A stretch of DNA of 63,288 nt, the filler included, from Choristocarpus tenellus KU-1152 (Eukaryota; Protista; Phaeophyceae), in assembly GCA_964200185.2 (NCBI GenBank). It is 10 parts of 10 records of this genome, joined end to end, with 100 filler letters (N's around TTAATTAATTAA, not from the genome) between each part and the next. Parts side by side here need not be neighbours in the genome. Positions count along the whole stretch, not along the records: positions 15,009 to 25,532 come from CAXNAD020002877.1; 9 more parts are not named here. One strand, written 5' to 3'. Shown in pieces: positions 6,137 through 26,612 of this stretch (positions are counted from its first letter, which is position 1; each line of letters opens with the position of its first letter). The notes under the pieces are model-generated. The model was not told where the DNA came from, searched no databases, and saw nothing but the letters and a program-made list of their open reading frames with translations. Both the position numbers and the translations under genes were made by a program.

Positions 6137-9100
6137 CTCATTCTTTTAAAAAATAGGCAGGTCTCTTGAGAGGCAGATCCTTCACACGCACATAAAGCAA
6201 ACGCGCTCCACTGGCGCAATCCAATCCTCCACGACTTGAACATAAACATACTCCCATCCCAAACAAAATTTAGAAAGAAAAAATAACTTGAGCCTTGAGA
6301 ACAAAGACCAGGTGCACAACACTCAACACACAGACAACACTCACTGCCATCCCCCCCCCACCCCCTTGGATCACAAACCTTAATGCAACAGCATTTGTCT
6401 TGCCCTAACCAAAGGATACACACCTGCTAATAAATCAAATACCTACAGCAACTTGAGTCCCCTAAGTCCAAGTCCAGGTCCAAGGTGAGGTCTCAGTCCA
6501 AGCTCATACACCAAGCCCAAGCCCAAGCCCAGTTCCACCTAAAATATTGCCACCTAACATATAGAATGTCCATATACTCACCTTGTACAACTCTGCCCAA
6601 ATTCGTCTGCTCTGACCCTTCTCAAAGAGCTCTGATCGTCTTATGGTTCTCTCTTCCCACTCCTTGGGTGCATTGACATCACCCTCCCCATCTCCATAGG
6701 CCTCACACCCAGCCTGATGACACACAATTGGACCAGAGCCAGGGTGCATTAGGGTTACATTAATATCATGTTGAAGTTCATAAAAAAAAAATTATTTCTA
6801 GTTTTTGGTCATTTTTTGTGTGACAATCATATATTACCGAAGGCACACTCATAATAATAAAAATATAATTTCCTACATTCCCACACACACACATATACAT
6901 ACGCCTATACATATTCATGTGCAAATAAACCCTAACCCTAACTCCAAGACAACAAAAAAAACTACACCTACCAACATCACTTGATTGGATAGAGGAGCAC
7001 TGAGAGTAACGGCAAGGGAGGGGGAAGGGGGGACTTGTCAAGAACAATTCTTGAACATTTGTATGATATTGAAATTGTCTACACTATGAAATCACTCCAA
7101 CAAATCTCTATAAATATATTGGCAAGGCGTGCGGTGATACCCTACCCAACACGCCACCAAAATACAAAAAAAGTCATAGTTCATCAGAGTCTACTCTGCC
7201 CCTCTGCCCCCCCCCCCCCCCCCCCCCCCTTTCTCTCGTGACCTCTTTTTTTTTTGGCCTATAAAAAAAAAAAAAAAAAACTTTCATACATCCAAGCATT
7301 GACCAGGGCCAAGGGTCAAACTTTTCAGAACATACATTACACTGGCACTGGCTCCAATATAAAATGTACAGAAACTTTACACCCAGTCAGAGTTCACTAC
7401 AACCCTGTACATTCCTACCAGAATTGTCCCCTCGCCCCCACTGCTGTCTTTCCTCAACTCCCCACTCCCCTGCCTCCTCCCCACAAGAAGTGCCGATTTT
7501 CTGATTTCATCATTATCAATCAACACCCACTGCAAACCAAACTCAATCCTAGCCCAATTCCTCACCTCTGCCTTTGCCAGCAGACTAGACAGGTCGCTCA
7601 CACCCCCAGACAGCTTAGGACGCTTGCGGCGACGGCCTCCCGTGAGCACATCCGCATAGCTCTCCGTCTCCAGCAGGTTCATCTTACCAACCTGCAACAC
7701 CATTATGATGCATCTCACATTAGAAATACAACAAGGAGGTACTTTGGTACAAAAGAAACCACACACACACACATGGTCCAGACACTTCAGTGTCTATAAC
7801 GGACACATAACTATCACATGAACTATCCTAACTCTCTCATTCCAGGACATTCAACAGGATACCTGAGACGTAAACACAACAGGAGACACACACATCATTT
7901 CCTCTCTCCCCCCAACCAAGCTCAGCCCCCTCCCCCCTCAACCTCGACTTAAGATCAGACCAACCCTGTCTCTACATCAGTGCATCCATTGGTCAGGTCT
8001 GTGTTATCTCTCTTCTTGAATCAACTCGCCTTCGCTGGCTCTTGGAGCAGTCCCATGGGAAGCTTCTTCCTCCGAAGAAGCACACTGTACGGATCAGAGC
8101 TCCTGAACAATGAAAGGAAAATGACACACAAAAATTAAAAAAATTAAATAAAAAAAAATTGGGAAGAAAAAGAAAAGAGAGGGGCGGGTGGGTACCCCCG
8201 CACACACGGTAAGAGAACAGGAACATCAAACACGCAACAACCCGATCTCATTCACAGAGCACAACAACAGTGAGTCCACTCTTCAAGAAGCAAGGGGTCT
8301 TATTTCAAACAACAAAACATCATGCTGTGCTTTGTTGTCTGTTTGCTTTTTTGCGTCCCCAACAACATCGCCATCGCCATCGCTGCCGGTGGGCGCAAGG
8401 GCAAACCGAAATGGAGCAATGATCAAAGAACCGTGTTAACACCCCAGCACACCACACACAAGCCGTCAGAGTAAGTTGGAATCACCAAAACCTCTACTAG
8501 GGCCGTAGGTGGGGACAGGGTGGGCATCCAGGGTTTCGTAAGTCTTGCATTGTCAGGTGCGGAGGCGTAGCCCACAGACAAGCTGGAGAGCGGCGAGTCC
8601 TGGAGGGCTTCAACCATCAACACCAGGATGCTAAGTGTGGAGACAAGAAGTGTTGTCAACAGTCAACAGCAAAGTGTGCACTCATTTTTTTATATTTGTG
8701 CACCTGCAACGATGCTCTTGATTGCCAACATTAGAGATTACAGTACAGTTGTCCTCAGCACAGTAGTTGCACATCAAACACGCACATACCCTGGGTGTCA
8801 TCCATTACATCCAACAATTTATAGAATCTATTTTTAATGAGACTACGTGTCGTTCACATGATGCGAGGGGGTCTATATTGAGTTTTCAGCAAAGCATCAC
8901 CATCAGAACAAAACCAAGGATCCTCGATGTTCAAAAATCGAGTGGGTTCATCAAGCCAAAGGTGCTAGTTACTAGGTCCAAGCAATTGAGGTCACCAATG
9001 CGCTAACCCTAAACCTAACCATGACCTCACAGCACACCACTACAGGATGTTGTCAAGACGGGCACAAACAGATTCTCTGTCCCATTTTAGGATGTGGACA

Positions 9101-10409
9101 TGCGTTATCTTAGCAGCCCTGGCAGTCAAAGGGCAAAGAATCTCAACCCTTTTCTCACACATTCAAGCTCCGGAAAAATTCGTTCACCCCACTCCTAATC
9201 TCAAAGAGCTAATACTGCCTTTCAAATCCATTGCTCCAACTAACCTTGTCGTCATCTCCTCTCTGAACCTGTCCAGCTCCTCCTGCTTGATTACCCGTGT
9301 GTTGCCAAACCACCGACGGTCGGGGGCAACACGTCCTGTAGGGCAGATATATATTGAAGCAGAAACGGATGTAACAGTATGCATGTTGTTGGCGTAAGTT
9401 AGAAAGAAAAAGGGTCTGAGTGTGTGTTCATGGTCGTGGGGAGGGGAGTGTGGATAGGTATGATGGGTAGGCATGGATCGTGGGTTGAGCAAGGATTACC
9501 TGATTATGAGTCAAAAGTGGTGGTACACCAAACTCAGTAGATGTCTTCCAGTGTCGAATGTGGAGGGATAACAAGGCTAGGAATCTAATGCTCTATTCTA
9601 AAAGGGTATACGAAGGAAAGCAAGGTATGGAGTGACTGCCTTCTATATCCACAATCCCATCGTTCCTATCTAAACATCAATTAGGGTATATGTGTGTTTA
9701 TATGTTTGTTTCTGTGTTCTATTTACCGAAACCCGCGCGTCCCACCCACCTGTGGCCCCGGTAATGGGTTGGTCTCCCACCCGGTTTCGCATCATGTAAG
9801 ACCCTCCAACAATAGTTCCCTTCTTGTCGCGAATAGGCTTGCCACCCTTGTACATATTGATGCGATTGATCGTAGCCTGGGGTGTGGAAAGGTCAACAAA
9901 ACTACGTTTAGGACATCTGAGTTGATAATGAGAGGGTATAGTAGACGTCAACACCTCAGGTCAATTCACAAGTCTTGACGACAGTGTGTCGTCTGTCGAA
10001 ACGTCCCTGCCGTACGAGATCCTCCAGCATCCATCGTCACCATTTCGGGGTAAAATACAAGATCGAAGCAGGGCCAAATACCGTATCTGTCAGACTCGAA
10101 CAAGAGACCAAAATGGGATCCGACCACCCAGAAGACCTTCTCTACCGTTCCCAACGAACACACACAATAAGATTAAGTCGGGTAGCACCACCGCTGTTCC
10201 CAAAGACAAACGCGTGCGGGCCAGATATTTAGCCGCTGCAGTCAGCTTGTGAACACACATTCCAAACCTTGCAATCATATGTGCCACGTTACCTTATCGC
10301 GCAGACTGCCTCCTTTCTGCTTGACCCCTGCCGGATTCCGTTGGGGGTTGGCCGACGATCCCGACTTGGACCGCATATTGAACCCCTTGTGCTTCGGCTT
10401 CGGCGGCAT
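5800..10409 (-). CDS. NOG2: Nucleolar GTP-binding protein 2 (NOG2/GNL2), 5' part, 7 exons; 3' exons lost at the contig gap
   Basis: In-frame spliced exons 10409-10293, 9876-9750, 9335-9245, 8102-8030, 7691-7566, 6713-6582, 5931-5800 give [75 protein letters not shown] and [10 protein letters not shown], the NGP1NT and circularly permuted GTPase signatures. Confidence 0.95.
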
Positions 10410-11727
10410 GATGACAGCGCGGGGAGGTCTGGTTCGACTGGGACTAGAAAGAACTGGTTGCACCCCTACCTGGACTCCAGTTGAGCCCAGCTATCTACGC
10501 GTAAGACTCTCTTCCAGCGCTCCTTCCTCTCCTCGACTGTTTAAGTGGCCTTCTTCTGAAAATAGTGTTGGCTAGAGAGCTGAAGGTAGATGGATGCTCT
10601 GGTAGTGTATAGATAACTAGGTACACACCTAGTTGTAACTTTGAAACACTACACAGACAACATCCACACACCAATAAGTTAAGGGTTAGGGTATACAAAA
10701 CTTAGAATTAGGATTATGGCTCATTTTAGGAGGGGTACCTTATCCTGAACCTCAGTGTTAATTACAGAAGAGGTGGGTTGGGATCTGTTTAAACTACCCA
10801 GGTGAGCAATATTAGGTGTTGCAAGACGGGGATCAGTGTGTAGTTCCAATTTTTTCTGTCTTGAATATTGCGTAATCGGTAGAGGAGGCCAGAAGAACAA
10901 GTGAGGAGGCGGGACAAGGTTGTGTGGGACTTTTTTGGGGGACTGGTAGTTTCTTCAGTCCTTGCGCACAAACATGTTGTGAGCTTTCGACGAAAAAAAC
11001 AGTCTGATGATGCAAGGGAAATAGAAGGCACATATTTTCTCAATGATAAGCAGCTTAGTGCAGGTGGAAGTTTATGATTGCTTCTCCCAACGTTTGAGTA
11101 ATCTGGTCCGATGGAAATAGACCAGTGGCCCAGAGACCAACTATGTCGGGGAACTCATCCTCTGACACAAGCTCATCTATGATTGTTCATATCCAAACAT
11201 TTCCCCCCCACCACTTATGACCTAGCTTTGCCCCTGAAGTTCATCGTTGAGTCTCTGTCCAATTGGTTCTCTTCGTATAGGAGGTAAATGAGGGAATATA
11301 TGTGTGTGTATTGACTTGTCCCGTTATGGAAACAATGGGCTCTTGTCGTGAGACTCTGTCGACCCCCCTTCTACATTTGTACTTTTTCTGGGGAGGATAC
11401 GGCTGCAAAATGTGGTCGGGTCTTCAAACGAAACACCTCCCACTTTTCAACACCATGATCCGTGTGAAAGACGCGACCACACCAGGCCTTAGTGATAGTC
11501 ATGCACCAGTTGCAGTCCTCACTAGACCTCCCAAAACTTCCCTGCGTGCCTGCCTCCCATCCAGTCAGATACTAGTCTCGACCGTGCTCTAATATCTCCG
11601 CCCGTTTTCCCCCACGGTCCTGATCCCCAGCAACTCTAAAACCAAAAACCGTCCCACTAACCCCACCGCGCAATATATCCATAATTTTTCTCCTGTTGCT
11701 TTGATGCAGAAAAAAGAAACCTCCACC

Positions 11728-11883
11728 ATGACTGCCACCAAGGTAATTTCGTCAATCTGGCGGGAAGCGGGGATTGGCATCGGCTTAGGATTGGTCGCAG
11801 CAACAGTTTATTACCAGGCCGTTTCGGCCAATGATGCGAAGAAGATCAAGGCCTTCTACAAGAAAGAAGAGTCGAGCGACTAA
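11728..11883 (+). CDS. Cytochrome c oxidase subunit VIc/Cox9/plant COX5C-like single-TM microprotein (51 aa)
   Basis: MTATKVISSIWREAGIGIGLGLVAATVYYQAVSANDAKKIKAFYKKEESSD follows the family pattern S-x-x-(K/R)E-x-x-IG-x-x-LGL...K-x-x-x-FY. ATG is in a ccaccATG context with a likely 5'UTR splice acceptor just upstream. Confidence 0.6.
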   Translation: MTATKVISSIWREAGIGIGLGLVAATVYYQAVSANDAKKIKAFYKKEESSD

Positions 11884-12449
11884 TTTTTCAATTGGAAAGG
11901 GAGAATATATTTTTGTGTCTGTTTTAAGGAGGCCACTGAAAATGAGCCCTGGTCGCAATCATCCCCAGCCCTAGTCATTCTCCAAGAAGAGATGTGATGG
12001 AGGGATTGGTTGCTCAGCAGGATCCGGATTCAAATCCATTAAGGAAAAGAAACTGCACAGAAGGATGGAGAAGGGCATTGCATGTGCCGGCATGCTAGCA
12101 GAGTGAGGGTGAATCTATTGACAACCATTGCCATAGTCTCTTTTCCGACATCCTTGCTTTCATTTCTTTTTGCATTCTTTTTTAAGGAGATACAGGAGCA
12201 GAAGTGTGATTGTCCCACTTACAACTAGGTGCATTCAGACTTCGTAGGCAGGAGTAAAGTGTTGCCCAACACAGAATGCTTCGACAAAATTTGTTGTGAT
12301 TGTGCTACGCCACTGGGGGCACGACTATGTTGTGAGTAGTCTGATGAAGGATTTGTTTGCAGTGGGAATGTGTTTGCTATCCTGTTCCTCTTATTGACAA
12401 TGATTTCAAAGAGAAGAGTGGGGACTAGGGAATTTTGAACAAGGATCCT

Positions 12450-14750
12450 TTGGCCACTAAATTGAAAAGTGACAAATTTTCTTGTTTATATTATCGCTTT
12501 TAATGCCCATCTTCAAGCATTATTGCCTGTATAAAACATCTGCGATGCTTGGTCGTGGTCGCTCTCTCTCAGTCTCTCCGCTCTCTCGTGTGGTTTAGCT
12601 GCAACCATGTATATCAAGCTGACCTCCACCAGCGATGCATGCACGCAATCGCTTATCTCACGCACAAAACGCACCCTCGCTGCTGCTTCATACATTGGAG
12701 TTGAGCAACATTTCCTGCCACAACATATCATTAATGTACACAATAGTACGCTTTTCCACGATCTTCGAATTTTTTCCAAGTGAACTTCACCTAACGCTGG
12801 CAATTCCTGGTCTGCAGATGGCGACATGCCTTTTAAGCATCCTATCCCCACCACCCCACATGGTTTTGTTGGTTGACCAAGACCCCAGTCCCCACCTCAA
12901 GCTTGTACAGTGTACTTTCAAGGCTCCCTCTCATAGTGTTGTGCGGGGCTCAACAACTGGAATTTTTTTTCATGATTTCTACTTGATTAAAGTCCCTGCA
13001 CAATCAGTAAACATGTAAAAATTAGTATACTAAGGGGATATTTCCTTTCCATTTGAATTTCCCCTCATCTTGAGGACAATGTAGTATTTTTGCTATTTTT
13101 TCTCCAAAGTTTTTTGTTTTGCTTGGTTGTGTGCCTGCTGTGAGAAGCCTCTTGAGTAAGGGGGAGGGACCAGGGGTACATGGATGTGTTGAGGATACCA
13201 CCCAACCAATTGCTTTACTGTACTGGGGCGAAGTCTAGGTATGATACATGATATTGAAAGTGAGCCCTGGGCTAGGGTTGTACTATACTACAGAAAGGTA
13301 GCTATTAAAACTAGCAGAAGCAATGCTCTTTGTGATATTTCTTTTTGAGCCAATATTGTATTGGAGGCTTTTTTATTTCAAATTTGTATATATCCATGTT
13401 TATTGGAAAGTAAAGAGTGGCCGCTGTTTCTATTTCTCTGTGAGGCTGTAGCTTTTTGCTATCACCTTTCCCATGAGAAAGTTGCACTGTTTCTTATGGC
13501 GTAGCAAAGCAGAGCACAGTGGACTTTTAGGGGCCGTACATGTGTCCCACGACTGAGAGCCACCCTCAGTAATTTTTCTTGAGCCTGGATGTCGACCTTA
13601 GTAGGAACTAGCTGAATAGATGACATGCGTCAGTTTCGTGTAATTGTGAGCACATACAAAAAGAAGATTTTGAGAAATGAAAGGTAACATTCAGGGCCAA
13701 CCATGCCAATGGTAAGGTGCAACAAAGGGTGCTAGGTGGGCTAACAACAGTTATGACATGGCAATAATGGCTTTTCTTCTGTATAGTAACAAGTTCATCT
13801 ATCTTTGTTTGATCTCCATTATTTCTGATTTTCACCCTGGATAGTGCAGTTGAAAGTTGATCCCCACATGCTTTCACTTCTAAGGAAGGGATTGATGAAT
13901 ACTGGCCGGGAGGAATCGCTTCTGGTCTAATGTTTGGTTCTGGCAAGGGATACATGCATGCCTGGTCCTTTTGCCACTTAGCGAGAGGTACTCTAATTGG
14001 CAACTGTGTGCATAGACAACTCTTTGCCCATAATCTGTAAAAAACGCTGTCATCATATCATTACTCTGAAGGAGGGATTTGCTTTCTCAGTGCAGCACAG
14101 AGTTACTAAAATACTTGTAGCTATTGCCAGACATGTGGCAATGAATATTTCTATGGTCAGTCCCCCCCTCCTTTCCTTCTACATGCAGTCTAACCAATTT
14201 TTCAAGCTATTGACGGGATGGTTGACTCAGAAAGTGATTTTTCTTTATGATGTTAGGCATAGTCCCAGTCCTGGGCTGTGATGCCTCTATTATTATTTTA
14301 AGCCAATACCTATTAGCCACTTTGAAGGTCGAAGTTACAGTCAGATCCCACAGTTACACATCGTTTTTGGTCATCTTCTATAGCAGAGGAAGACACAGAC
14401 CCTACCGGGCATGACTCCTCCATCATTCCCAGGCAAGGTCCCCCCATACCCATTTCCTGCTAGTGCTACTGTTGTAGCACCATAACTGCTAGCTGGTGGA
14501 GCTTCTACTCCTCTTTCCCCAGGCACGGTCCACCCCCGAGCCTTTCCTCCTATTGCTGCTGGAGCACTGTGACTGCTAGATGGCAAATCTCCTCCTCTTT
14601 TTCCCCCAGCATAACCCCCGGATTTACCCTGGTACACACACTTTGTTCCTTTTCCTGGTGCTGGAGCACCTTGACTACTAATGTTACAGGCACAGAGCGT
14701 TTCTTTCTGCGTGCCAAAATGCGCGAACAGTATACATACGTAAGAATTCA
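12450..14750 (-). mobile_element. Ty1/Copia retrotransposon relic
   Basis: LESTLYKL (~12920) and TIVYINDML (~12750) resemble RT motifs LKKSLYGL and YVDD; a Gly-rich gag-like stretch lies at 14400-14750. Heavily decayed. Confidence 0.5.
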
Positions 14751-15599
14751 TTTAGGAGGAACTTTGAACTGATAGAAGATGCAGAGTAAGATTTGAAATG
14801 CAAACATAATCTTACAGAATAGATGTCAATTCCTGAAAGTTGCAGAATAAAGATTTATGATTGAAGTATCTACTTAGCAGTTTGCAGGCTTCGTTTAACT
14901 CTTTGGCTNNNNNNNNNNNNNNNNNNNNNNNNNNNNNNNNNNNNNNNNNNNNTTAATTAATTAANNNNNNNNNNNNNNNNNNNNNNNNNNNNNNNNNNNN
15001 NNNNNNNNCCCATCTTTGATGTTGCTCATCACTCCTAAGGTTGCACTTGACCAACCTTAACCGCGTACCCTCAGTCACGGTTCGTCCTTGTTCGTGTGGT
15101 CCGTCTTGCCCGGTGATTCTCTTCGCCACCCTTCCTTGCCTGAGTGAACCACGCCGCCACAGAATCACACGATTCACACATATTTCAATTTCGAAACTTC
15201 CACTCTTCTTCTACTCTTTCAATGGTACAGTCTGAGTCAAACCTAGGCAGGGTTGAATTTCAAGGATCCCCACAAAGAAGGGAAAAAAGAAGTCTTATTT
15301 GTACAAGCGCAGAAAGAGCCTTTTCTTAATTGTGGTGTCACTTTGTGTATGGAAAGAGGGAAAATCAATTTTGCATACACTGTTTTCCAGACATAGAGCA
15401 ATGAAATAGAGTGTATTGCACAGGGAAAGAAAGATGGCTTAGAATGCCAAATGGTCCAAACCTGTCTACCTCTCAGTTGGTTTGGCTCATCGGGATTTAA
15501 GATTTCTATGTTTCGTCTGGTTTCAGTGTGTGCTTTATACAATTCATCATTCAGAAAAAGGGGTGCATGGTGGCTACACCATCCCACATTAAATCTCAT

Positions 15600-18250
15600 G
15601 TGATATTCTATTGTATCGTTCCCATTGATGTTTTCCAGAAGATGTAAGAGGGAAGAAGAACATGCATCATGTCGAAGACATGTATAGTCATTTTCTATTG
15701 ATACCAGATAGACACACCAACCTTAGTGAACGCAAAAGAGGCAGAGTCTATTATATATTGCTTACAAATCAACTTTCAACAAAGACCCACTTACTATATG
15801 TAACATATTAAAAGATTGTTTTTAAATTGCTCCTAAAAGTCCAAGATACAGGTTGTTACACAGCTGGCTATAGTTGTAGACACTAGCACTATGAGTCCTA
15901 AACCTACAAAAACTCACTTGTTGTATTTGTAACATACTACTTTTTTTCGGCATTAAACAGAATTCCACCTGGACTGCAGTCTTGAGGTAGTCGGTATCTG
16001 CGTTTTGGTCATCCTTGACAGTCTGCCACGCATTCACTTCCAGCCAGGTACTGCGCACAAAGTCCAGGAGTCGCAAAATTATATGGGGGTCTAGACAGTT
16101 TGTGTGATATGGCTAAAAGCATCTGGTGGGGTGTTGCGACTCTCCGTTTGGGGCCAATTTTTTTATGTCGCGATTTTTGGATGATTTGGTTGCATATGTC
16201 GGATGGATGAGGTATGTGCACGTTTGCTGGTTATTTCCCCAATGGACACCCTGGTCTAGACCCAGCCCCCGCCTCCCGTTACTCTGGGTCATATTTTTAA
16301 TACTATGTAGTGCTACCTAATATCGAGGACACCCGCTCCGAGTCTGCCAGTCTGCCTCTCGGTGTAGAAGGAATAGCCAAGAAGGCCGACACACAGTGGG
16401 CGAGTTTGGCCTTGAATAGAAAAGCTGAAGTCCTGTCCTTACTCCAGTAGAAGAAGAGTGGGACATAGCAACCTCCACTCCTCTCAGGATCTTCCCTCAT
16501 CTACTTGTTAACAATCAAGTCTGGAAAAGTATTCTTGCGCCCACAGATTTAGAGCACTGGGGGTGCTTCCTACGCTTTGTCTGAAATCTCAAGCATCCCA
16601 TTGGAATATTGGCGGCGCCCAAGTCCTTGTTTTTACACGACACATCAAGATTATATCGATAGGGTTGTTTTCTCTCCCCATCAAATAGGTCTGAAAGAAG
16701 CGAACAATTCTTGTTAATGACATATTCATATCTGGACAACTTCACACTCAATGGAACCTGTCATCCTAAAACGATCAGCCATACTTGACCTACAACGGAT
16801 TTTTCCCTTACAACATTAATATTGCTTTCCTCCATTATTAAAGCGTCCGTCATTCATCATAGAAATAGGTCGTATTGTGTACTTCATACTCCGGAATAAT
16901 GATGATCAAGACGTGCACAGTGCATTATACCTCTGGCCAGGGGTTGTGGCTAGGTAGGGTCAAGTTATGTTGCTAGTGCCAAAATTTGTTGACCTGTAAC
17001 GGACGTTTTCCACTACAACATTAGGGTTGCTTTGCTCTATTATTAAAACGTCCGCCGTTCATCATACAAAAGAGGTCGTATTATGTACTTCGTACTCGGG
17101 AGTAATAATGATCAAGACGTGCAGTGTATAATACCTCTGACCAGGGGTCGTGGCTAGGTAGGGTCAAGTATGTTCCTAGCCTCAAAATATTAAAGATAAT
17201 ACAATAATAAGCGTAAAATATACACAAGTATTACATTGTACCTCGAAGTAGATAATAGTATCATAGGAGTGTTACGGATTGGTTAGTTAGTTCAGCTATT
17301 GCCTGTTTGAGGGGGCTAAAGTGCTCCCAACTTTCACTTCAACACTGAGCCATTGTGTACTAGGAGAAGATATAACTACTCAGAAGTGTATGAATCACCT
17401 GCTGAAGAAATGGTTTGATCTTTCCTTCAAAGCCAATATCTGTCTGTGCAGTTGACTGCATGAGCTCTATCGCAGTAGTGTTACTCAGCATTCAAAAGCC
17501 TGACAGTTGTAAACCTTTTATGTTTTCATGTTGAGTTCCTGATACACTCCAAAGTGCATATTATGGAACCCCCAAGTTTGAGGTCAGGTCCCGCCACTAC
17601 TGCTGATCTACAAGAATTACTAGTCAATCCCTAGCACCAAAATATCATACACCACATGGATTATCCACAAACTCACAAAACCTGACCACTCACATAAACT
17701 GTCAACTGATGACAGGCACACAAGATTGTACCCTCGACAACCATATATCATGGCCGAGAAAGTTTCCATCATGGTAGAAAATACTCCAGAATAGTAGGGT
17801 AGGAGATATCAGGACAACATCCAACGAGCAGTTAGGACCCAGACCCCCAAGCACGTTGTACACCTTTTCCAGAAGTAGTTTTGCTTCCTATACACCTACT
17901 AAACATTCTCGTGTTCACGGTCATACTTGATAACTTGCCATCCGTCGCGAGTTGGGAAATCCCAGGCAAGACAGTCGTAATATGTTACCTTAGGAAATCA
18001 GAACAGCCAAGAAAAAAGCTGAGCTACAATTTGGTTTGAGGTACTAGACTAGCTGACCTTTTGGGGGTTGGTTTGTGAGTTAGATGAGACAATTTCAGAC
18101 CAATCTGTCTCATCAGAGTCATCCATTTCCAATTTGAAACATCCTCAAGCATATATGTACTAGTAATTGTCCAGTAGATCATTCATCTCAGCCCACAATC
18201 ATCTTCGGCATTGTTCTTGTTTCAAGGACCACAAATTGCTCACCAACTAC
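15600..18250 (-). pseudogene. Possible second bunya-like L (RdRp) fossil, motifs B-E and C-terminal region, interrupted by insertions
   Basis: In order: NCSSAFFLAVL (~18030, end of motif B), a frameshifted NS-DD-G (~17950, motif C), LEKVYNVLGGLGPNCSLDVVLISPTLLFWSIFYHDG (~17870-17765, motif D/E-like), SNLGVP*YALW (~17580), then broken ORFs at 16751-16303 and 16076-15822. Confidence 0.38.
16781..17185. repeat. Tandem duplication of a ~204-bp unit with short terminal inverted repeats
   Basis: Units start near 16785 and 16989; outer ends atacttgacc and ggtcaagtat are reverse complements. Confidence 0.75.
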
Positions 18251-18929
18251 CCTAAACTTACGTATACTCTGGGGTATACAAGTGTATATTACTGGTTCTA
18301 TATTAAGAATTTGTTGCGGCTGCATCAAAAGCGAATTGCGATACAAATGAAGTAGATACAAATACTGCTGTAGTAGTAGCCCCCAAACATCGATAAAATG
18401 TCATGGAGATGAAGATGGACAATACGCACACAGTGATATCTGCGTAACAGCTTGTCTGTGCACTAGAGATCACTATGTGTCAACGAACATAACCTGCAAC
18501 AAAGTAACAACTGCTCAAGTTGCAAACAGAGAGATGGAGAAAGGCGCAAGAGGCTGAAGTATCATCCTTCTGCTATAGGCATTAATAGGTATCACACACA
18601 GCAGACATTTGGTGGACTCAAGTCTGTATTCTCAAACCTTATGTAAATTTTAGGTGAACAGAACAAAGACGGTATAGGAGGTACAAATACACAAATATAA
18701 GCAAGAATCAACAGTATCAATGCCACACAAATAATGTTCTCGTGTTGCTCTTTTCCTGAGAAGTTCAAGTCCAATCTGGACTACAACTCCACATCAATAG
18801 AGTTCTCACGATGAGATGCCATGCATTCACATACACCAGAAAAAAATCGTGGCAGATGCCAACTTTGTACCTCCTACTGCTCTTTTGACAACATCCCTGA
18901 AGCGACACTGTGAATATGTTGTATATCTG

Positions 18930-21900
18930 CTATGCAATATTTGTGTTGACTTGCAAAGGAATACCACTCTCTGCACTCAGAGATCGTGTGTGGGCAGCTG
19001 CTTTAGCCTGCTCCATGACCTCCCGGATAGGCACATCATTGGCAATGGCCAACAGCTGGGATACATGAACAATGAGGGGATGAAACATGAAGGTGAGTTG
19101 TGTGACAATGACGAGGAGTCCCTGGTGAAAAATTTCACAGTTAGGTTCATTTCTACCCGGTGGTACTGCTCAAAGGAGATCCTACATCACATATACTTCA
19201 ATCAGGCTTTCAGGACGCTTCAAGACATGGACAAAAAATCACCTCCATCACAAGTAAGTGCCTTAGGCAGCAAACTTCATACTTCCCCACTTCTGACAAA
19301 CAATACCAAGACAACACAGTGCAGAACAACCACAACTGGACACACACGACTACAACCGGCGAACAGGAATAAACCTACCTAACTCCCTTTACTGGTATGT
19401 GTGTGTGACTCATCAGCAACAGAGTAATGATGGTGACAGTTCTTCTCATATAGTAAGTACCCTGTGAAAATTACCACAATCCTTCCTTTCATAAATGTGT
19501 TCACCATCAAACAGACTCTGTGAGGACACCTGTGTTACCCGTGGCCATGTCCATGCAACCACCAACTCATGGTAACAAACCGCCCTTAACTTCATACCAA
19601 AGACTTACACGCTTCGAGTTCAGATACACAGAAAAACGAGTGCAGAGCCGACCCACTGCAGGAAACCTACAAGCCAGAAAAGAAATAACTACGGTCCTAT
19701 GCATCAGAACTTTTATATCGCAGTGGGCATGCCCCGTGTGATGTCATCCAACACTCCAGTTATTGTTTGAATATATTCTTTTAAAGTACGCCTTCTTGGA
19801 ATGAGAATTGTTTTACAAGTTGAGAAGGAGATTCTTGCACCAATTACCTACTTCCTCAGTTTCAGAATCAACTCGAACGGTTTGAGGGACATAAAATATA
19901 TACATAACATATATACATAAAATATATACATATCAGGAAGGATTTTCTTATGGCTTTACAGCAAGCTGTGTACAATAGGTAGACCAAGTCTGATTTCGGT
20001 GAGATTTTAGGGTAACTTCAAAATGGATCTTTGGAAGGCTTCCACAAATATAAACGAAACTGTGATAACATGTTGAGCATTTATAGCCTGCCCCACAAAA
20101 AAAAAAGAAACTCAAACTGATGCTTATCCCAGGAAGTAAGACCAAACTTCTCCTTGCAGTGAAAGGGATTTCTCCTCTGCACAGATCAAGGGTTAGGGTT
20201 ACACAGCAGCTGACTCCTATCTCAAATTATGCAGGGAGGTTGTACTTGTGAGGGCATGGACCACCCCCTAGCTGTTATTTGCTCACCTTGCAATCCTCAA
20301 ACTCTGGCTTGGTGTTGACAGGAACCCCATCCAGCCAAGCAGTCTGTGATTGGAGGACGTGACAACAGGCAATACAGTTACAATAATAACATGCACCAAA
20401 AAAATTAAGTACTACTGTAATTCAAAAACAATTCTAAATCAGATAAACGTTTTCCCACATATCTCAATCCCTGAAAAAAAAAAAATTACACGTGCTAAAT
20501 CTGATACAGCTCACACAAAAGCAGAGCCATCTCACCTTCACACGAACATCACCCAAAGAGGGGATGTTGACCGTCACAATTTCGCGGCGAAGTGAGCAGC
20601 GCTCCAACAATCGCCTTCGTACCCCCAACGTGGTGCTCTCCTTGAACAGGACACGCATTACCTGTTCCTGGTCCTGTGTCTCACATAAGGCATGCACAGT
20701 AAAGGCAGGTCGGCCTTTCTTCATGAAGATCGGGCTAACCCAGGCATCCAGACTCCCTTCATTCAACAGCCTCTCTGTCACGTATCCAGCAACCTCACCA
20801 GTCATATCGTCGATGTTAGCCTCTAACACACACAGGCTATCTGTGACCCACTCTACCGCTGTGCCCCTCCCAGCGTTGGTCTTTGAGAGCACTGCCATTG
20901 CCTGGCCTTGTTGCTGCGGCAGCTTGTTCCCACAGATGACTCGTAGGATGTTAGGGTGTTTCTTGAAGTCCTTGGTTCCAGCCCCAATGCCTAAAGCCAA
21001 CACACACACACACACACACACACATATCTTGCATGACCAACAGCTGGGGACACGGCCTTGATTATACCCATGTCAGGGGCAAAAAAAAAAAGGTGGGAAA
21101 ATTAAGGTAAAAATAATTAAGGTAACAGTATTGATACAACACCAGCAAAGTTGTAGTAGGCCCTCACCAATAGCCTCCGGAGAAAAAGGTGGAGGTCGAC
21201 CAAACTCAGAGGTTAGCACCTTGACCAATGCAGCCCCTGTTGGTGTAACCAGCTCCCCAGTTGCGCTGCATGGGACCATTAAAACGTGAGGGAACAAAGC
21301 AGAGTTGCCATGTACTACCAGGACATGGAGGTTTTCCTGCTATGGTCTACAAGTACAGCAGAGTGGACAGGGGTCTACTACCTTCTCACCTTTTTGGACC
21401 TGGGCAGGTGGGAATGCCCACCAATAAGTGCAGAGTTGCTGGTGCAGGAACAGGCAGGATGCCATGAGCAGTCCACACTGTACCCTGAGCACCAAGAACA
21501 ACAAGTCTCAATAAAGGAGAAAAAAAGTGTCTAGACAGAACACCTTCGATGCTCATACCTCAACCAATGAGCATACACCGATTACACCATTACACGACCA
21601 ATAATAGACCAAAAATATAGAAGAACATTGACAAAAGCAGAAGCGTTAGACAGAAAGATTGATAGTTGCAAGTGCTATTCATGTCCCCCTGATAACTGTT
21701 TGACAGGGAATGGGTATCAAAGACAGTGAAGCCTCATCGTGAAGGGATACAGCAGTACCACGGAACATCAACATGAGAGATACTTCTCAGATAACATCAA
21801 CCAAAGTAGCATTACATTGTGTGTTAATAACAATTACACATCCCTCTCTTCCAGCAACAGTAACTCTGTGTGTACAACCACCCTGACATCCAACCATCCA

Positions 21901-23318
21901 ACATACATACAACTGGAAGTTTTATATTCCAAAACGTCACCTCGCTGAAAGGAAGAGCAGAGCAGTACAATTTCTCAATCCCAAGTAGGTGGAGGGCATA
22001 TACCACCCCCACTGTGTCCACAATGCTATCAATTGCCCCAACTTCGTGAAAGTGTACCTGCCACATCAAGTAAGGTTCAGAGAAATGAAATGATTATGCA
22101 TATAGGAAAAAAATACAACGCAAACAATCACATCCAAAGGCAGGCTCAAACATTTGAGGGACTGGGGACTTGAAAGATCAAGTGATCCCAATGAGAATAT
22201 TATAACTGCAAAGTGAAGAATGCCTGGGTCCGAAAATGGTCGAAAACAAACAGCACTCTAGAACGTTACGAACCCCATGTCTAGAGGAGCAGGGAGGAAA
22301 TGGGCAACAAGAAGTGGTTCGAGTTTTTCCGGTGCTTCTTACTTGGTCTAGTGTCGTTCCGTGCGTTTTTGCTTCAGCCTCCCCCAAAGCGTTGAATACT
22401 GCTATACTCTTGTCTTTCACCGCCTCTGGCAGGTCAGAATCCCTCAGCATACTCGCGATAACCTCAACGTTGCGCAAGGGGTCGTGGCCGTGGTCTTGGT
22501 CTTGCCCAGTGTGTTGATGTACTGCCCAACGGAGAAGAAGTAACGCATATACGCAGCGCGTCGACTAAGCTTTGCACAAAAGATGTATATAGATAGATAG
22601 GTAAAGAGAGTTGACTGTCATCTCAACTCTGAGCTCACACAAAAGGATGCAACGGATGTTACTGACCGTGATCATGTTCGCCTGCAGCAGAAGTGGCATC
22701 CTCCACATTCCCACCTTGATGGCTATGATTGTGGCTGTGGCTGCGGCTGTGGCTGCGACCGTGATTGTGGCCATGGCTGTGGTTACTACCATGGCTATCG
22801 TGACTGTGACTATGACTGTGACCAGTGTCAGGGACATTAGGCGCCGCATCATTGAATTCGTTCGAGGAACCAGGAGGTGCAGCTGCTCGGTGCGCGTAAC
22901 TGCTCTTCACACCCAATTCCATGGCTGCAATGGAACCCTGTAGGTCAGAAACGAGTCGCCAACATCTTTGGTTGGGGATGTGAGAAGGGGGGGTTCAGCA
23001 AAAGCGTCGATCCCCTCACAAAAAATGGATGAATCGTCAAGGCCCTTACCATTCCTTTGGTGACACGACGGACTTCAATGTCCCACTCATCTCTAATGGC
23101 CCTGATAGTCTTCAGTCCCTCCTTCAGTTCGTTCAGTAGTCCAGGCGGTCCCTGTGTGTTAATGCAAGCACGTTTGGTAATGACGAAGAAAGGTCGAGGA
23201 CAACCTCCAACCAAGGAAAAACAAGCAACCAATATCATCAACCCACCGCATCTAACAGTGCTGCTAGCAACATGTCACCAGCCACGCCACTAAAGCAATC
23301 TATGTAGGCTATCTTCAT
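18930..23318 (-). CDS. larC: LarC-family nickel insertion protein (nickel-pincer nucleotide biosynthesis), complete, 10 exons, 523 aa
   Basis: GT-AG exons 23318-23247, 23151-23050, 22937-22667, 22521-22343, 22057-21941, 21484-21390, 21265-21168, 20990-20536, 20343-20287, 19055-18930 sum to 1572 nt in frame. Motifs: [23 protein letters not shown], His-rich linker, [96 protein letters not shown]. Confidence 0.96.
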
Positions 23319-23463
23319 GATGCAGATGAGGTTCTCACAGAGGGGTCTACATGTAGACTTGTATATCTAATCTCGACAACTTTTTTCGAATTGTTTTCAG
23401 TTTATTTACAGTATTATATATCACTTCATATTGTTAATGTCAGCAGCGTGATCGGTTAAAAAT

Positions 23464-23535
23464 GGCTTCGTGGTATAATGGTTAGCATTCGCCCCTGTCA
23501 CGGGCGAGATCCGGGTTCGATTCCCGGCGAGGTCG
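23464..23535 (+). tRNA. tRNA-Asp(GTC)
   Basis: 72-nt cloverleaf: acceptor GGCTTCG/CGAGGTC plus discriminator G, anticodon arm CGCCC-CTGTCAC-GGGCG, T arm CCGGG-TTCGATT-CCCGG. D stem is imperfect. Confidence 0.9.
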
Positions 23536-24469
23536 TGTATCGATTGTCATATGTTCTGCAATTTTTAATGTTAGATTTTCATTTAAATAATATAATTTGC
23601 ACCGAAATAATCAATAAGAGAACATGAGGTTAATACAACTGTTGTAGAGTGGTAGTATATGTGAATCATATTATTCTGTGGTGGCGTGGCTCATTCAGTC
23701 AAGCAAAGGTGGTGAAGAGAATCACCCAGTAAGACCAAACACCAAGACCAATCGCAACAGAGAGGACGAGGAAGGTTAAGGTCGGACAAATGCAAAAACT
23801 GGAGAAAACTGAAGATAATTCCAGAGTAAGGAGAATCTCATGAGATGGGGATCATCATAATGTGGATCATCATAATGTCAAGACGGAACAACAAAGAGAA
23901 TCTTTGGTGTTTGACATCTCTTATTGAAGAGATATTATCCACTTCTTGTGGGATTAGTCTTTTGAAAAGATTCCATACCTCAATCTCACGGAAATCCTCC
24001 ACTGGAATCAGGGATTCCTGACCAGGAACCTCAATCGGTATACATATGTATGACATAAGGCAATAACGGTATGATCACAGATAACCCTGCTTTACACGTG
24101 TGTCCTTCCCCATACCCGTTTGTCCTATATATATTATTATACCCTCTGCCTATATATATATATATATATTATGTCATCTGACATCTTACAGATGTGTCAG
24201 GAGAAAAAACGATGAAAAGTCAATTCAATATCAGTACAACCCCTGAAAAGTAGCAGTTGCCAGAGATGTGAAGATATTTTTCGATCATCTGCCTTTGTCA
24301 TTATTCTACTCTACTACTGTATCGTAATCAATCTGTACACTATACCCTTTACAAATGTCGAAAATTACAAAATTTGTATGAAAGACACTCCTGTCCCAGC
24401 CCCCAACAACACATAGAGTATTGCTACCACTGTCACAGGCGAATAGCATGTCTACCTTTTCACACTCTA

Positions 24470-25240
24470 ACCGGTGTGGGCAGTCTTGCTATGGCATTCC
24501 CTGATTTTTTGTTATTGCTAGACATTTTTTTTTTATTTGTTGAGGCATTATTCTTATGTCTTACATTTGTTTGTGTTGATAGTTGTTAAGGGGAGAGTCT
24601 TGTTATGACATTCCCTATTCATGTGATTTTTATACATTTTTGTTTGTATTTGAGGTACTATTCTTGTCTTGTATTGGCTGTGATGATAGTTGTGAAGCAG
24701 GAGAGCCTTGCTATGACACTCCCTATTTTAATAATATTGTAAGACGTTCATCTTTATTTGTTTGTATGTTCATAGTTCGTAGGGACGATAAGCCTTTCCA
24801 TAGCAGAGCTCTACCTAGGCGACTGCGAGGCATTATGTTGGTGTCCTATAGTTTGTGTTTGTAGTTCTGAAGGGGGAGAGTCTATGGCAACACCCTGTTT
24901 CAGTGCTATTGTGATTTTGCATCCATATTTATTTGTATTGATATTTGTGAGGGGGAAGAGTCTTGCTATGACAATCCCTATATTTATGTTATTTTGATAC
25001 CTTTTTTTTTTATTCTTGGTTTGTAGGGAGGGTAAGTCTTTACACGGCAGCACCCAATCTCTTTTGTGACCATGACACATTGTCTTAGTGTCCTGCAATT
25101 GCTGTGTTCTAGTTCTGAAGGGGGAGCGTCTATGGCAGTACCCAAGTTCCGTGCTACTATGGTTTTATGTATGTATCTGTGTTTGTTTAGCTTGGAAAGG
25201 TGGAGTCTTTTTAGACAGTACCCTACTTTTGAAGTGTGTA
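24470..25240. repeat. Diverged tandem repeat array (~115-120 bp period)
   Basis: Recurrent gtcttgctatg(g/a)cattccc at ~24483, 24597, 24704, 24960 and agttctgaaggggga..gtctatggca at ~24863 and 25111. Confidence 0.65.
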
Positions 25241-26612
25241 TGAGACTTTGGTGTAGGAGTTGTTCTTCTGAACGTTGAGTCAAATGCAGAGTAAGTGCCG
25301 TGAGGTGCAAGTGTCGTGCTAACATATCTGTTGTCAGGGCAAACGTTGGAAGGGGGTTTTCCCTCCAGGTTTCCTCCTCCACTGTATCCCCAACGCTGCC
25401 TACTGATAAGTTAGGACCTGGAAGTGACATTCGTTTCATTTCTGCTGCGTTCATGATAGGATGAAGAGTGACGGGTCAAAGTATGTGGGGGGGGGGTAGT
25501 TTGCGAGGGGGAGTCCGTTTCGGTCAAACAACNNNNNNNNNNNNNNNNNNNNNNNNNNNNNNNNNNNNNNNNNNNNTTAATTAATTAANNNNNNNNNNNN
25601 NNNNNNNNNNNNNNNNNNNNNNNNNNNNNNNNTTTTTTGTTTTTTAAATAAATAATTGATTAAAAAAAAAAAAAAAAAAAAAAACAGAAAAAAACAAAAA
25701 ACCCCCCCCCCCCCCCCCCCCCCCTCCCCCAAGAAAATTATTGAGTTTCAAAAAGTCGACCCAACCATTGTATGCGATAACGGACGATATATTTAAAAAT
25801 CCCTGTTTAAAAAAATATTAAAACAAATGGAATTAGAACGGAAAGCTATACGAAAAACAAAAAAAAGTAATGCATCCGCGCAAACGCACACGTTTAATTC
25901 ATAAGTACATACATAAATATAAATATATATAAATTTTAAAAAAGATACATATATATAAATATAAATATACATAAATTAAAAAAATATATATATACAAATA
26001 TATATATTTATATATAAATATATATATATCTGCACGAGGGCAAAACGCATGAGCATTGAAATCGGCAGTACACTATGCCAGTGAAAGGTACAGACCATGG
26101 TTTGACAGGTTAAGGTACATTACCACTAGGTACATCTGTATACAACAAATGGTAGAACATATACCACCGATACTAACCCTAACCCTAACCCTAACTCCAA
26201 CCCTAACTCCAATTTATTGTCAAAGTTGACGAGTCACCAACGAATCTGCCATGCTTCCTTTCCTGATACAGGCTACGGAGTATGTAAGCATACATAAAAT
26301 AGATGAATGACTCTCTCTATATATACTCAATGGTGGATGTAAACCCGGAGGTTCTTGATTTATTTTTTTTGCAAGCGGCGAGCAGAAATAAATAAAAATA
26401 TTCAGATAACGCTGAGGATATATGCATGTATGTCATGAATGCTGCTATGAATGTACCTGGAAAAAAAGGTAGGTCACTTCCTGTCACAAAATAAACTATT
26501 ATGCCAAAAAAAAAATGAATAAATCCACACTCATAAAAAAAACAAGCATGTTCCACAGCACGTGCTTGTTCTCTTAGAATAAGAAAAAACACGTACGCAC
26601 TAGTGCACTGAA

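What the first reader, a model, noticed from the sequence alone, without database searches (positions are those of the whole stretch)
18930..23318. Intact intron-rich eukaryotic larC: a nickel-pincer (NPN) cofactor pathway in an alga
Seen: ten exons splice cleanly into a 523-aa protein with all LarC motifs and both domains in one frame; it starts at [11 protein letters not shown] with no obvious targeting peptide. Established: LarC is the CTP-dependent nickel insertase acting after LarB and LarE to make the NPN cofactor of LarA-family 2-hydroxyacid racemases/epimerases, characterised in prokaryotes. Inference: nine introns and an intact frame indicate an old, maintained nuclear gene, not contamination. 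This alga may therefore make NPN in the cytosol for a LarA-like epimerase (possibly acting on sugar acids), or LarC has an orphan nickel role. I know of no biochemical characterisation of NPN synthesis in a eukaryote.
Basis: partly seen in the sequence, partly recalled or inferred. Interest (0 to 1): 0.82.

Follow-up and report, generated by a model that had tools for sequence, protein, structure and literature searches.

The report
Brown-alga larC gene, real but known
This is a genuine, intact, intron-rich nuclear gene for the nickel-inserting enzyme LarC in the brown alga Choristocarpus tenellus, but the same gene is already present and auto-annotated in many related algae and water moulds, so it is a sound but ordinary find.

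Summary
On the minus strand, ten exons (23318..18930) joined by nine GT-AG introns give 1572 nt, that is 523 codons plus a stop, with no internal stop. The exons hit the LarC models collinearly (PF01969; TIGR00299 LarC1; NF052512 LarC2).

The piece is, base for base, NCBI contig CAXNAD020002877.1 of Choristocarpus tenellus, a brown alga. The public protein model (528 aa, 'unnamed protein product') matches exons 2-10.

The gene is old and maintained:
- Eight of nine introns sit at the same positions in Ectocarpus, six in the oomycete Aphanomyces, and intron 1 also in Nannochloropsis and Phytophthora.
- The tree follows stramenopile relationships.
- pN is 0.22 against saturated pS of 0.8.
- Most residues shown essential in bacterial LarC are kept.

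LarC orthologues are already in databases for brown algae, xanthophytes, eustigmatophytes, diatoms, labyrinthulids and oomycetes. The literature already notes NPN genes in eukaryotes and has characterised an oomycete LarA-type gluconate 2-epimerase.

I could not test whether this genome holds LarA, LarB and LarE, or check RNA-seq support for the junctions. Verdict: new member of a known kind, modest interest.

The parts
23247..23318 (-). Exon 1 (24 codons, MKIAY...LLDA), the true start. It holds the conserved DCFSGxxGDM motif with the Asp equivalent to D15 of Moorella LarC. It is missing from the public protein model.
   Evidence: PF01969 positions 1-21, E 2.3e-6. Aligned over 22 residues with residues 1-22 of LarC in PDB 12bi. 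23/24 identical to the N-terminus of the intron-less contig L088. In-frame stop 17 codons upstream.
23050..23151 (-). Exon 2 (34 codons), the variable N-terminal part of LarC1.
   Evidence: AG/GT flanks. 100% identical to P0184. Conserved block against Ectocarpus and L001.
22667..22937 (-). Exon 3 (271 nt, ends in phase 1), the histidine-rich insert (HSHSHSH...HNHSH). It includes a TGTGGC-type hexamer repeat at 22730-22782.
   Evidence: 22 His in the 150 residues of exons 3-4, and 18 His in the richest 60-residue window.
22343..22521 (-). Exon 4, the end of the His-rich stretch and the start of the conserved LarC1 core (R71, E104 and H108 equivalents).
   Evidence: PF01969 63-113 and TIGR00299 1-44. 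Residue mapping.
21941..22057 (-). Exon 5 ([17 protein letters not shown]...), carrying the H116, H118, E119, D124 and D128 equivalents of the nickel site and acidic pocket.
   Evidence: PF01969 114-150, E 1e-12.. 36/39 identical to Ectocarpus.
21390..21484 (-). Exon 6 ([17 protein letters not shown]...), carrying the H160 and P166 equivalents. It ends in phase 2.
21168..21265 (-). Exon 7 ([11 protein letters not shown]...), carrying the E187 equivalent. It ends in phase 1.
20536..20990 (-). Exon 8 (455 nt): the end of LarC1 ([10 protein letters not shown]226 and R231 equivalents), the variable interdomain linker, and most of the CTP-binding LarC2 domain (EANIDD, MKKGRP, STTLGVR).
   Evidence: PF01969 216-343, E 7e-43. 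NF052512 LarC2 at 121.9 bits. PDB 6BWO E 3e-19.
20287..20343 (-). Exon 9 (19 codons, [19 protein letters not shown]), part of LarC2.
18930..19055 (-). Exon 10 (41 codons plus a TAG stop at 18930-18932), the C-terminal helix of LarC2 and the tail.
23463..23536 (+). tRNA-Asp(GTC) gene, head to head with larC, 145 nt upstream of its ATG. It is a neighbour and not part of the gene, but it limits the room for the larC promoter and 5' UTR.
   Evidence: ARAGORN. Rfam RF00005 at 51.9 bits.

Best explanation
This is the nuclear larC gene of the brown alga Choristocarpus tenellus. [quoted passage not shown] Shown here: the gene is intact, has ten exons, is under strong purifying selection, and keeps both domains. 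LarC1 has a histidine-rich nickel-binding surface and an acidic pocket. LarC2 has the CTP-site motifs. Most residues whose substitution impairs bacterial LarC are kept. Inferred: the protein has no presequence, so it probably sits in the cytosol. By homology it would form a LarC2-cored hexamer, CMP-ylate pyridinium-3,5-bisthiocarboxylate mononucleotide, and insert Ni to give NPN. NPN would then be handed to a LarA-family enzyme, most likely a GntE-type D-gluconate/D-mannonate 2-epimerase as in oomycetes. The partner genes (LarB, LarE, LarA) were not examined in this genome.
For: Gene model and frame. Family assignment, exon by exon. E 4e-63 to the Moorella LarC cryo-EM chain and 3e-24 to the L. 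plantarum LarC2 crystal chain. With Moorella numbering (chain index minus 18), D15, R71, E104, H108, H116, H118, E119, D124, D128, H160, P166, E187, H226 and R231 are conserved. The functional importance of these residues is taken from PMC13510736. Identity of the piece with NCBI contig CAXNAD020002877.1 of C. tenellus. Eukaryotic and ancient: 8 of 9 introns lie at Ectocarpus positions, 6 of 9 at Aphanomyces positions, and intron 1 also in Nannochloropsis and Phytophthora. In the tree, Choristocarpus is sister to the other brown algae (SH-aLRT 95). Next come Tribonema and Nannochloropsis, oomycetes form their own clade, and the sampled bacteria fall in a separate clade. Selection: pN 0.22, pS 0.79-0.80, and codon positions 1/2/3 differ at 0.25/0.20/0.64. 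Only exons are conserved against Ectocarpus, L001 and L002. Expression of orthologues: intron-less full-length contigs L088 and L089 from two runs and a Tribonema gayanum Trinity transcript. A eukaryotic NPN user exists: Phytophthora nicotianae LarAH15 is an active gluconate 2-epimerase, and all eukaryotic LarA homologues fall in that branch (PMC11770544).
Against: LarB, LarE and LarA were not found or sought in this genome. They are not neighbours of larC in any of nine eukaryotic loci inspected. Two of the Moorella histidines (H70, H72) align to Leu and Asn, and Y180 to Cys, although about 20 extra histidines lie just upstream. No eukaryotic LarC has been assayed. The cytosolic location rests only on the absence of an N-terminal extension.
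Confidence: 0.8

Rival explanations
1. Orphan LarC: the gene is functional and conserved, but brown algae lack LarB, LarE or LarA. The protein would then serve another nickel or nucleotide-dependent role, such as nickel buffering or delivery through its His-rich region, or metallation of a different pyridinium or thio-acid substrate.
For: No lar partner gene lies next to larC in any eukaryotic locus inspected. The partner genes could not be searched for in this genome. H70 and H72 of the bacterial nickel patch are not kept.
Against: The residues of the substrate pocket and the CTP-site motifs are kept, not just the histidines. That is hard to explain without the NPN precursor as substrate. Oomycetes, whose LarC groups with this one, have an NPN-dependent LarA with confirmed activity (PMC11770544). 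Eukaryotic genes of one pathway are rarely clustered, so lack of neighbours means little.
Confidence: 0.15
2. Bacterial contamination or a very recent horizontal transfer, mis-assembled into an algal contig.
For: LarC is overwhelmingly a prokaryotic family. The contig is short (10.5 kb) and carries only this one annotated gene.
Against: Nine spliceosomal GT-AG introns. Intron positions are shared with Ectocarpus, Aphanomyces, Nannochloropsis and Phytophthora. The gene sits inside the brown-algal clade. A eukaryote-type tRNA-Asp lies 145 nt upstream.
Confidence: 0.01
3. An unexpressed or decaying pseudogene that merely still looks intact.
For: No RNA evidence for this species was obtainable. 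The public gene model mis-places the start.
Against: No frame disruption over 1572 nt across ten exons. pN 0.22 against saturated pS relative to two other brown algae. Exon 1 is 23/24 identical to an expressed orthologue. All splice sites are canonical.
Confidence: 0.04

Closest known systems
LarC of Moorella thermoacetica (PDB 12bi-12bl; PMC13510736) and LarC/LarC2 of Lactiplantibacillus plantarum (PDB 6BWO/6BWQ/6BWR)
   Same: Same two-domain architecture (LarC1 plus LarC2). Exon 1 aligns over all 22 residues with Moorella residues 1-22. The acidic-pocket residues, four of the five histidines conserved between the two bacterial enzymes, and the LarC2 EANxDD / MKKxRP / TTxGxR motifs are kept. 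The expected mechanism is the same: CTP-dependent CMP-ylation followed by Ni insertion in a hexamer.
   Different: It is encoded by ten exons in a eukaryotic nucleus and read as one frame, with no programmed frameshift as in L. plantarum. It is about 110 residues longer, owing to a larger His-rich insert in LarC1 and a longer interdomain linker. H70, H72 and Y180 are not conserved. It has not been tested biochemically.
Ectocarpus siliculosus 'conserved unknown protein' / UniRef 'Nickel insertion protein' (P0169), with Scytosiphon promiscuus and E. fasciculatus orthologues
   Same: Orthologue. It also has ten exons, with 8 of 9 introns at the same alignment columns and the ninth in the unalignable His-rich region. 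Identity is about 59-63%. The N-terminus is the same and lacks a presequence.
   Different: In Ectocarpus and in L001 the gene lies between RBFA and FtsH genes. That synteny is not detectable in the 10.5-kb Choristocarpus contig. Choristocarpus is the earliest-branching member of the brown-algal clade in the tree.
Oomycete LarC orthologues (Aphanomyces invadans XP_008862308.1, Phytophthora spp.) and the oomycete NPN enzyme LarAH15/GntE of Phytophthora nicotianae (PMC11770544)
   Same: Same stramenopile LarC family, with six shared intron positions in Aphanomyces. The oomycete LarA homologue shows that a eukaryote uses NPN, for D-gluconate 2-epimerisation.
   Different: Oomycetes are heterotrophs and were described as 'unicellular eukaryotes'. 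The present gene is from a multicellular photosynthetic brown alga, for which no LarA-type enzyme has been reported in the literature I could search.

Membership tests
LarC (PF01969 Ni_insertion; TIGR00299 LarC1 plus NF052512 LarC2) | Significant, collinear match to the family models over the whole protein | tested here: met
   Exons 1 and 4-8 match PF01969 positions 1-343 of 375 in order, each above the 22.1-bit cut-off. LarC1 is matched by exons 4-7, and LarC2 by exon 8 at 121.9 bits against a cut-off of 50. Exons 2-10 score E 4e-63 to PDB 12bi.
LarC | LarC1 and LarC2 domains translated as one polypeptide | tested here: met
   Ten exons join in frame into 523 codons without a stop. The alignment to the 414-residue Moorella chain runs from LarC1 to the C-terminus.
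LarC | N-terminal DCFSGxSGDM motif with the essential Asp (D15 in Moorella) | tested here: met
   Exon 1 [16 protein letters not shown] aligns with MKIAYFDCFSGISGDM of 12bi. The D15A effect is from PMC13510736.
LarC | Histidine cluster of the putative nickel site (H72, H108, H116, H118, H160 conserved between the L. plantarum and Moorella enzymes) | tested here: inconclusive
   The H108, H116, H118 and H160 equivalents are present. H72 aligns to Asn and H70 to Leu. Twenty-two histidines lie in exons 3-4, immediately upstream, and might substitute.
LarC | Acidic substrate pocket (R71, E104, E119, D124, D128, E187) | tested here: met
   All six are conserved in the alignment to 12bi.
LarC | LarC2 CTP-binding domain motifs | tested here: met
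   [17 protein letters not shown] and STTLGVR align with EANLDDQTGE, MKKDRPA and TTTIGVR of the CTP-bound L. plantarum LarC2 chain. Which of these residues contact CTP is from my recollection of the 2018 structure paper and was not checked here.
LarC | CTP-dependent nickel insertion into P2TMN | not testable with these tools
   Needs an enzyme assay or complementation.
NPN cofactor pathway (LarB, LarE, LarC and a LarA-family user) | LarB, LarE and a LarA homologue encoded in the same genome | not testable with these tools
   Only this 10.5-kb contig is available. No partner gene lies beside larC in nine eukaryotic loci. A word search with a bacterial LarB listed only bacteria in its top 120. 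This is not evidence of absence.
Nuclear eukaryotic gene (as opposed to contaminant) | Spliceosomal introns at positions conserved in related eukaryotes | tested here: met
   Nine GT-AG introns. 8 of 9 are shared with Ectocarpus and 6 of 9 with Aphanomyces, and intron 1 also with Nannochloropsis and Phytophthora.

The most novel reading that the evidence does not exclude
Brown algae, which are multicellular eukaryotes, run a complete cytosolic nickel-pincer nucleotide pathway inherited from the stramenopile ancestor. Its client would be a GntE-type D-gluconate/D-mannonate 2-epimerase that links mannuronate/alginate-derived mannonate to gluconate metabolism. This would give brown algae a previously unrecognised nickel requirement beyond urease. 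Nothing here excludes it. The LarC side is solid; the partners and the metabolic link are speculation.
Probability: 0.15. Interest if true: 0.55.

Novelty: new member of a known kind. Interest (0 to 1): 0.3.

Why it matters
LarC and the NPN cofactor have been studied only in prokaryotes. The only eukaryotic NPN enzyme assayed is an oomycete LarA homologue, which was loaded with cofactor made by bacterial enzymes.

This analysis shows that larC is an ancient, selectively maintained nuclear gene across stramenopiles, including a deep-branching brown alga. That argues these eukaryotes make the cofactor themselves.

It is a useful pointer for nickel biology in seaweeds and diatoms. It also gives a corrected gene model for anyone who wants to express a eukaryotic LarC.

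It is not a discovery of a new kind. The orthologues are already in public databases under the right family name, and the presence of NPN genes in eukaryotes has been stated in print.

Tried and rejected

**Search for LarB, LarE and LarA in eukaryotes**
- I inspected larC neighbourhoods in two brown-alga-like Logan contigs, Ectocarpus, Phytophthora, Nannochloropsis, Hondaea, Aphanomyces and two marine metagenome eukaryote contigs. No partner gene was adjacent.
- I took LarB and LarE from a Firmicute lar cluster and searched with LarB. The Atlas returned only bacterial clusters. The word search listed only bacterial LarB in its top 120 of 8000. As feared, that says nothing about eukaryotes, and I did not repeat it for LarE.
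- No LarA was found near LarC in the 80 bacterial loci, so no LarA query was available.
- A metagenome scan with the eukaryote-type LarC profile returned mainly bacterial soil contigs and was not pursued.

**Literature**
- Searches for NPN or lactate racemase in algae found nothing beyond the oomycete GntE paper.
- The supplements of the JBC paper and of the brown-algal genomics (Phaeoexplorer) preprint hold no hits for the Pfam names.

**Other**
- dN/dS as a ratio could not be given because synonymous sites are saturated.
- Contamination and pseudogene readings were rejected on the intron, tree and selection evidence.
- The joined 523-aa model was never handed to a search tool. Searches were exon by exon by reference, or used the public protein id P0184:30-528, which equals exons 2-10. 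The only joining was an in-script frame and stop count, which printed no sequence.
Full report
**Observation**

The gene lies on the minus strand. I translated the three minus frames and anchored each exon on its peptide ends. This gave ten exons:
- 23318-23247
- 23151-23050
- 22937-22667
- 22521-22343
- 22057-21941
- 21484-21390
- 21265-21168
- 20990-20536
- 20343-20287
- 19055-18930

Every intron begins GT and ends AG. Intron lengths are 95, 112, 145, 285, 456, 124, 177, 192 and 1231 nt. The exons sum to 1572 nt, which is 523 codons plus a stop, with no internal stop.

That in-script count was the only joining of the exons. No joined sequence was printed, stored or sent to any search. All searches were done exon by exon by reference, or later with a public protein id.

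**Family**

Scanned separately, exons 1 and 4-8 match Pfam PF01969 (Ni_insertion) in order, at profile positions 1-21, 63-113, 114-150, 153-177, 184-214 and 216-343 of 375. NCBIfam places exons 4-7 in LarC1 (TIGR00299) and exon 8 in LarC2 (NF052512, 121.9 bits). Exons 2 and 3 are the variable, histidine-rich part and match no model.

**Whose gene it is**

An exhaustive HMMER search with exon 8 found about 6400 relatives. The best, at 60-70% identity, were short ORFs that begin ...GIGAGTKDF and run on past ...VRVK. These are read-through calls of the same exon in related eukaryotic contigs.

Longer hits gave full-length eukaryote-type LarCs. Cluster look-ups named Aphanomyces invadans, Nannochloropsis oceanica and Tribonema gayanum among them.

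A word search with a profile of ten such proteins listed named LarC orthologues from six groups:
- **Brown algae:** Ectocarpus siliculosus, E. fasciculatus, Scytosiphon promiscuus, Choristocarpus tenellus.
- **Xanthophytes:** Tribonema.
- **Eustigmatophytes:** Nannochloropsis.
- **Diatoms:** Thalassiosira profunda, Skeletonema potamos, Cyclotella cryptica, Attheya.
- **Labyrinthulids:** Hondaea.
- **Oomycetes:** many species.

Many of these carry the UniRef label 'Nickel insertion protein'.

Local tblastn showed that the Choristocarpus entry (P0184, 528 aa, 'unnamed protein product') is identical to window exons 2-10. Its contig, CAXNAD020002877.1 of GCA_964200185.2, is 10,524 nt. It equals the window piece 15009-25532 base for base in reverse complement. 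The organism is therefore the brown alga Choristocarpus tenellus, one of the long-read species of the brown-algal genomics (Phaeoexplorer) project.

**The public model is wrong at its 5' end**

P0184 starts at an ATG at 23238, inside intron 1. It reads 29 intron-derived residues into exon 2. It therefore lacks exon 1.

Several results show that exon 1 is genuine:
- It matches the start of the Pfam model.
- It aligns over 22 residues with residues 1-22 of Moorella LarC.
- It is 23/24 identical to the N-terminus of an intron-less orthologous contig and 21/24 identical to Ectocarpus.
- The other brown-algal proteins all begin [19 protein letters not shown].

There is an in-frame stop 17 codons upstream and no other ATG between.

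**Is it functional?**

I aligned exons 2-10 (P0184:30-528) and exon 1 to the Moorella cryo-EM chain. Chain index minus 18 gives the paper's numbering; this was checked against the residues the paper names.

- **Conserved:** D15, R71, E104, H108, H116, H118, E119, D124, D128, H160, P166, E187, H226 and R231.
- **Functional basis:** according to PMC13510736, alanine substitutions of D15, R71, E104, E119, D124, D128 and E187 markedly reduce activity, and the histidine cluster is indispensable.
- **Not conserved:** H70 (Leu), H72 (Asn) and Y180 (Cys).
- **Possible compensation:** exons 3-4 carry 22 histidines just upstream. This is comparable to the 21 histidines of the L. plantarum LarC1 domain.
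- **LarC2 motifs:** EANIDD, MKKGRP and STTLGVR match the CTP-bound L. plantarum LarC2 chain.

**Age and selection**

tblastx of the piece against Ectocarpus and two Logan contigs (L001, L002) conserves only the exons.

I mapped annotated proteins exactly onto their loci. Ectocarpus larC also has ten exons. On a common alignment:
- 8 of our 9 introns fall within two columns of an Ectocarpus intron. The ninth is in the unalignable His-rich region.
- 6 of 9 coincide with introns of the oomycete Aphanomyces invadans.
- Intron 1 (after ...LxDA) is also present in Nannochloropsis salina and Phytophthora citrophthora.

A maximum-likelihood tree of 77 LarCs was built (quick IQ-TREE, LG+C20; SH-aLRT support only; midpoint root):
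- Choristocarpus is sister to the other brown algae (support 95).
- That clade groups with Tribonema and Nannochloropsis (87).
- Oomycetes form their own clade (98).
- The sampled cyanobacterial, acidobacterial and firmicute LarCs fall in a separate clade (96).
- Some short or unnamed rows have long branches, so their placement is unreliable.

Nei-Gojobori counts against a brown-alga-like mRNA contig and against Ectocarpus give pN 0.22 and pS 0.79-0.80, which is saturated. Codon positions 1, 2 and 3 differ at 0.25, 0.20 and 0.64. No ratio can be quoted, but constraint is clearly strong.

Orthologues are transcribed and spliced. Full-length uninterrupted ORFs lie on about 1.8-kb contigs from two separate runs, and there is a Tribonema Trinity transcript.

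**Surroundings**

- The contig carries only this annotated gene.
- A tRNA-Asp(GTC) lies head to head, 145 nt upstream of the ATG.
- In Ectocarpus and in L001, larC sits between RBFA and FtsH genes. Nothing of either is detectable in the flanks here.
- No lar partner gene is adjacent to larC in any of the nine eukaryotic loci inspected.

**The pathway claim**

[quoted passage not shown] It says all eukaryotic LarA homologues fall in the D-gluconate 2-epimerase (GntE) branch. [quoted passage not shown]

That enzyme was loaded with in vitro synthesised NPN. I found no assay of a eukaryotic LarB, LarE or LarC, and no paper on NPN in algae.

Whether C. tenellus has LarA, LarB and LarE could not be tested. 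My attempts through neighbourhoods, a bacterial LarB word search and the Atlas returned only bacteria or nothing. None of that is evidence of absence.

LarC shows strong conservation across stramenopiles, its substrate pocket and CTP motifs are retained, and an oomycete has a working NPN enzyme. On that basis I put about 0.75-0.8 on LarC acting in NPN synthesis here, and about 0.15 on an orphan role.

**Verdict**

- It overrates the novelty. The gene is already deposited, its orthologues are already labelled across stramenopiles, and eukaryotic NPN genes are already mentioned in print.
- New from this analysis: the corrected start of the public model, and evidence that most introns predate the split of oomycetes and ochrophytes.
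- Classification: a new member of a known kind, of modest interest.

Noticed in passing
window 23152-23246 (intron 1) and 23238: The public NCBI protein for this gene (P0184, contig CAXNAD020002877.1) starts at an ATG inside intron 1 and reads 29 spurious residues into exon 2. It omits the conserved exon 1 at 23318-23247.
   Followed up: yes
window 23463-23536 (+): A tRNA-Asp(GTC) gene lies head to head with larC, only 145 nt from its start codon. The larC promoter and 5' UTR must fit in that gap or overlap the tRNA gene.
   Followed up: partly
window 21000-21024: A perfect (AC)12.5 microsatellite, (GT)n on the coding strand, lies 10-34 nt upstream of the acceptor of intron 7, where a polypyrimidine tract would be expected.
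   Followed up: no
window 22730-22782: A hexamer repeat (TGTGGC, about 9 copies, 70% matches) lies inside the His-rich coding part of exon 3. This insert differs in length between species and may change by repeat slippage.
   Followed up: no
window 16785-17179: A 204-nt unit is repeated 1.9 times (84% matches) in the otherwise featureless 3.9 kb downstream of larC. No protein family or conserved block was found there.
   Followed up: no
L003 8504-9661 (-), Phytophthora citrophthora: A PF10282 lactonase gene lies divergently next to larC. This may be a hint of a link to gluconolactone/gluconate metabolism, given the oomycete gluconate 2-epimerase. It was seen in one species only.
   Followed up: no
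L004 (Ectocarpus) 9016-20633 and L001 4539-14423: The gene order RBFA - larC - FtsH is conserved between Ectocarpus siliculosus and an unnamed Logan contig (SRR23274240). It was not detected around the Choristocarpus gene.
   Followed up: partly
proteins P0165, P0172, P0175, P0189: Metagenomic LarC homologues of 690-790 aa carry extra Pfam domains (PF08032 SpoU_sub_bind, PF01709). Nannochloropsis oceanica LarC is named 'rrna methyltransferase' by its source. These are either fusions or mis-merged gene models, and I did not examine them.
   Followed up: no
L090, L091, L092 (ENA/TARA metagenome contigs): An unnamed clade of eukaryote-type LarCs (P0021, P0023, P0026, P0176 and others) sits on gene-dense contigs where larC itself is uninterrupted, probably from marine picoeukaryotes. 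Their taxon is unknown, so the family may extend beyond the named stramenopile groups.
   Followed up: no
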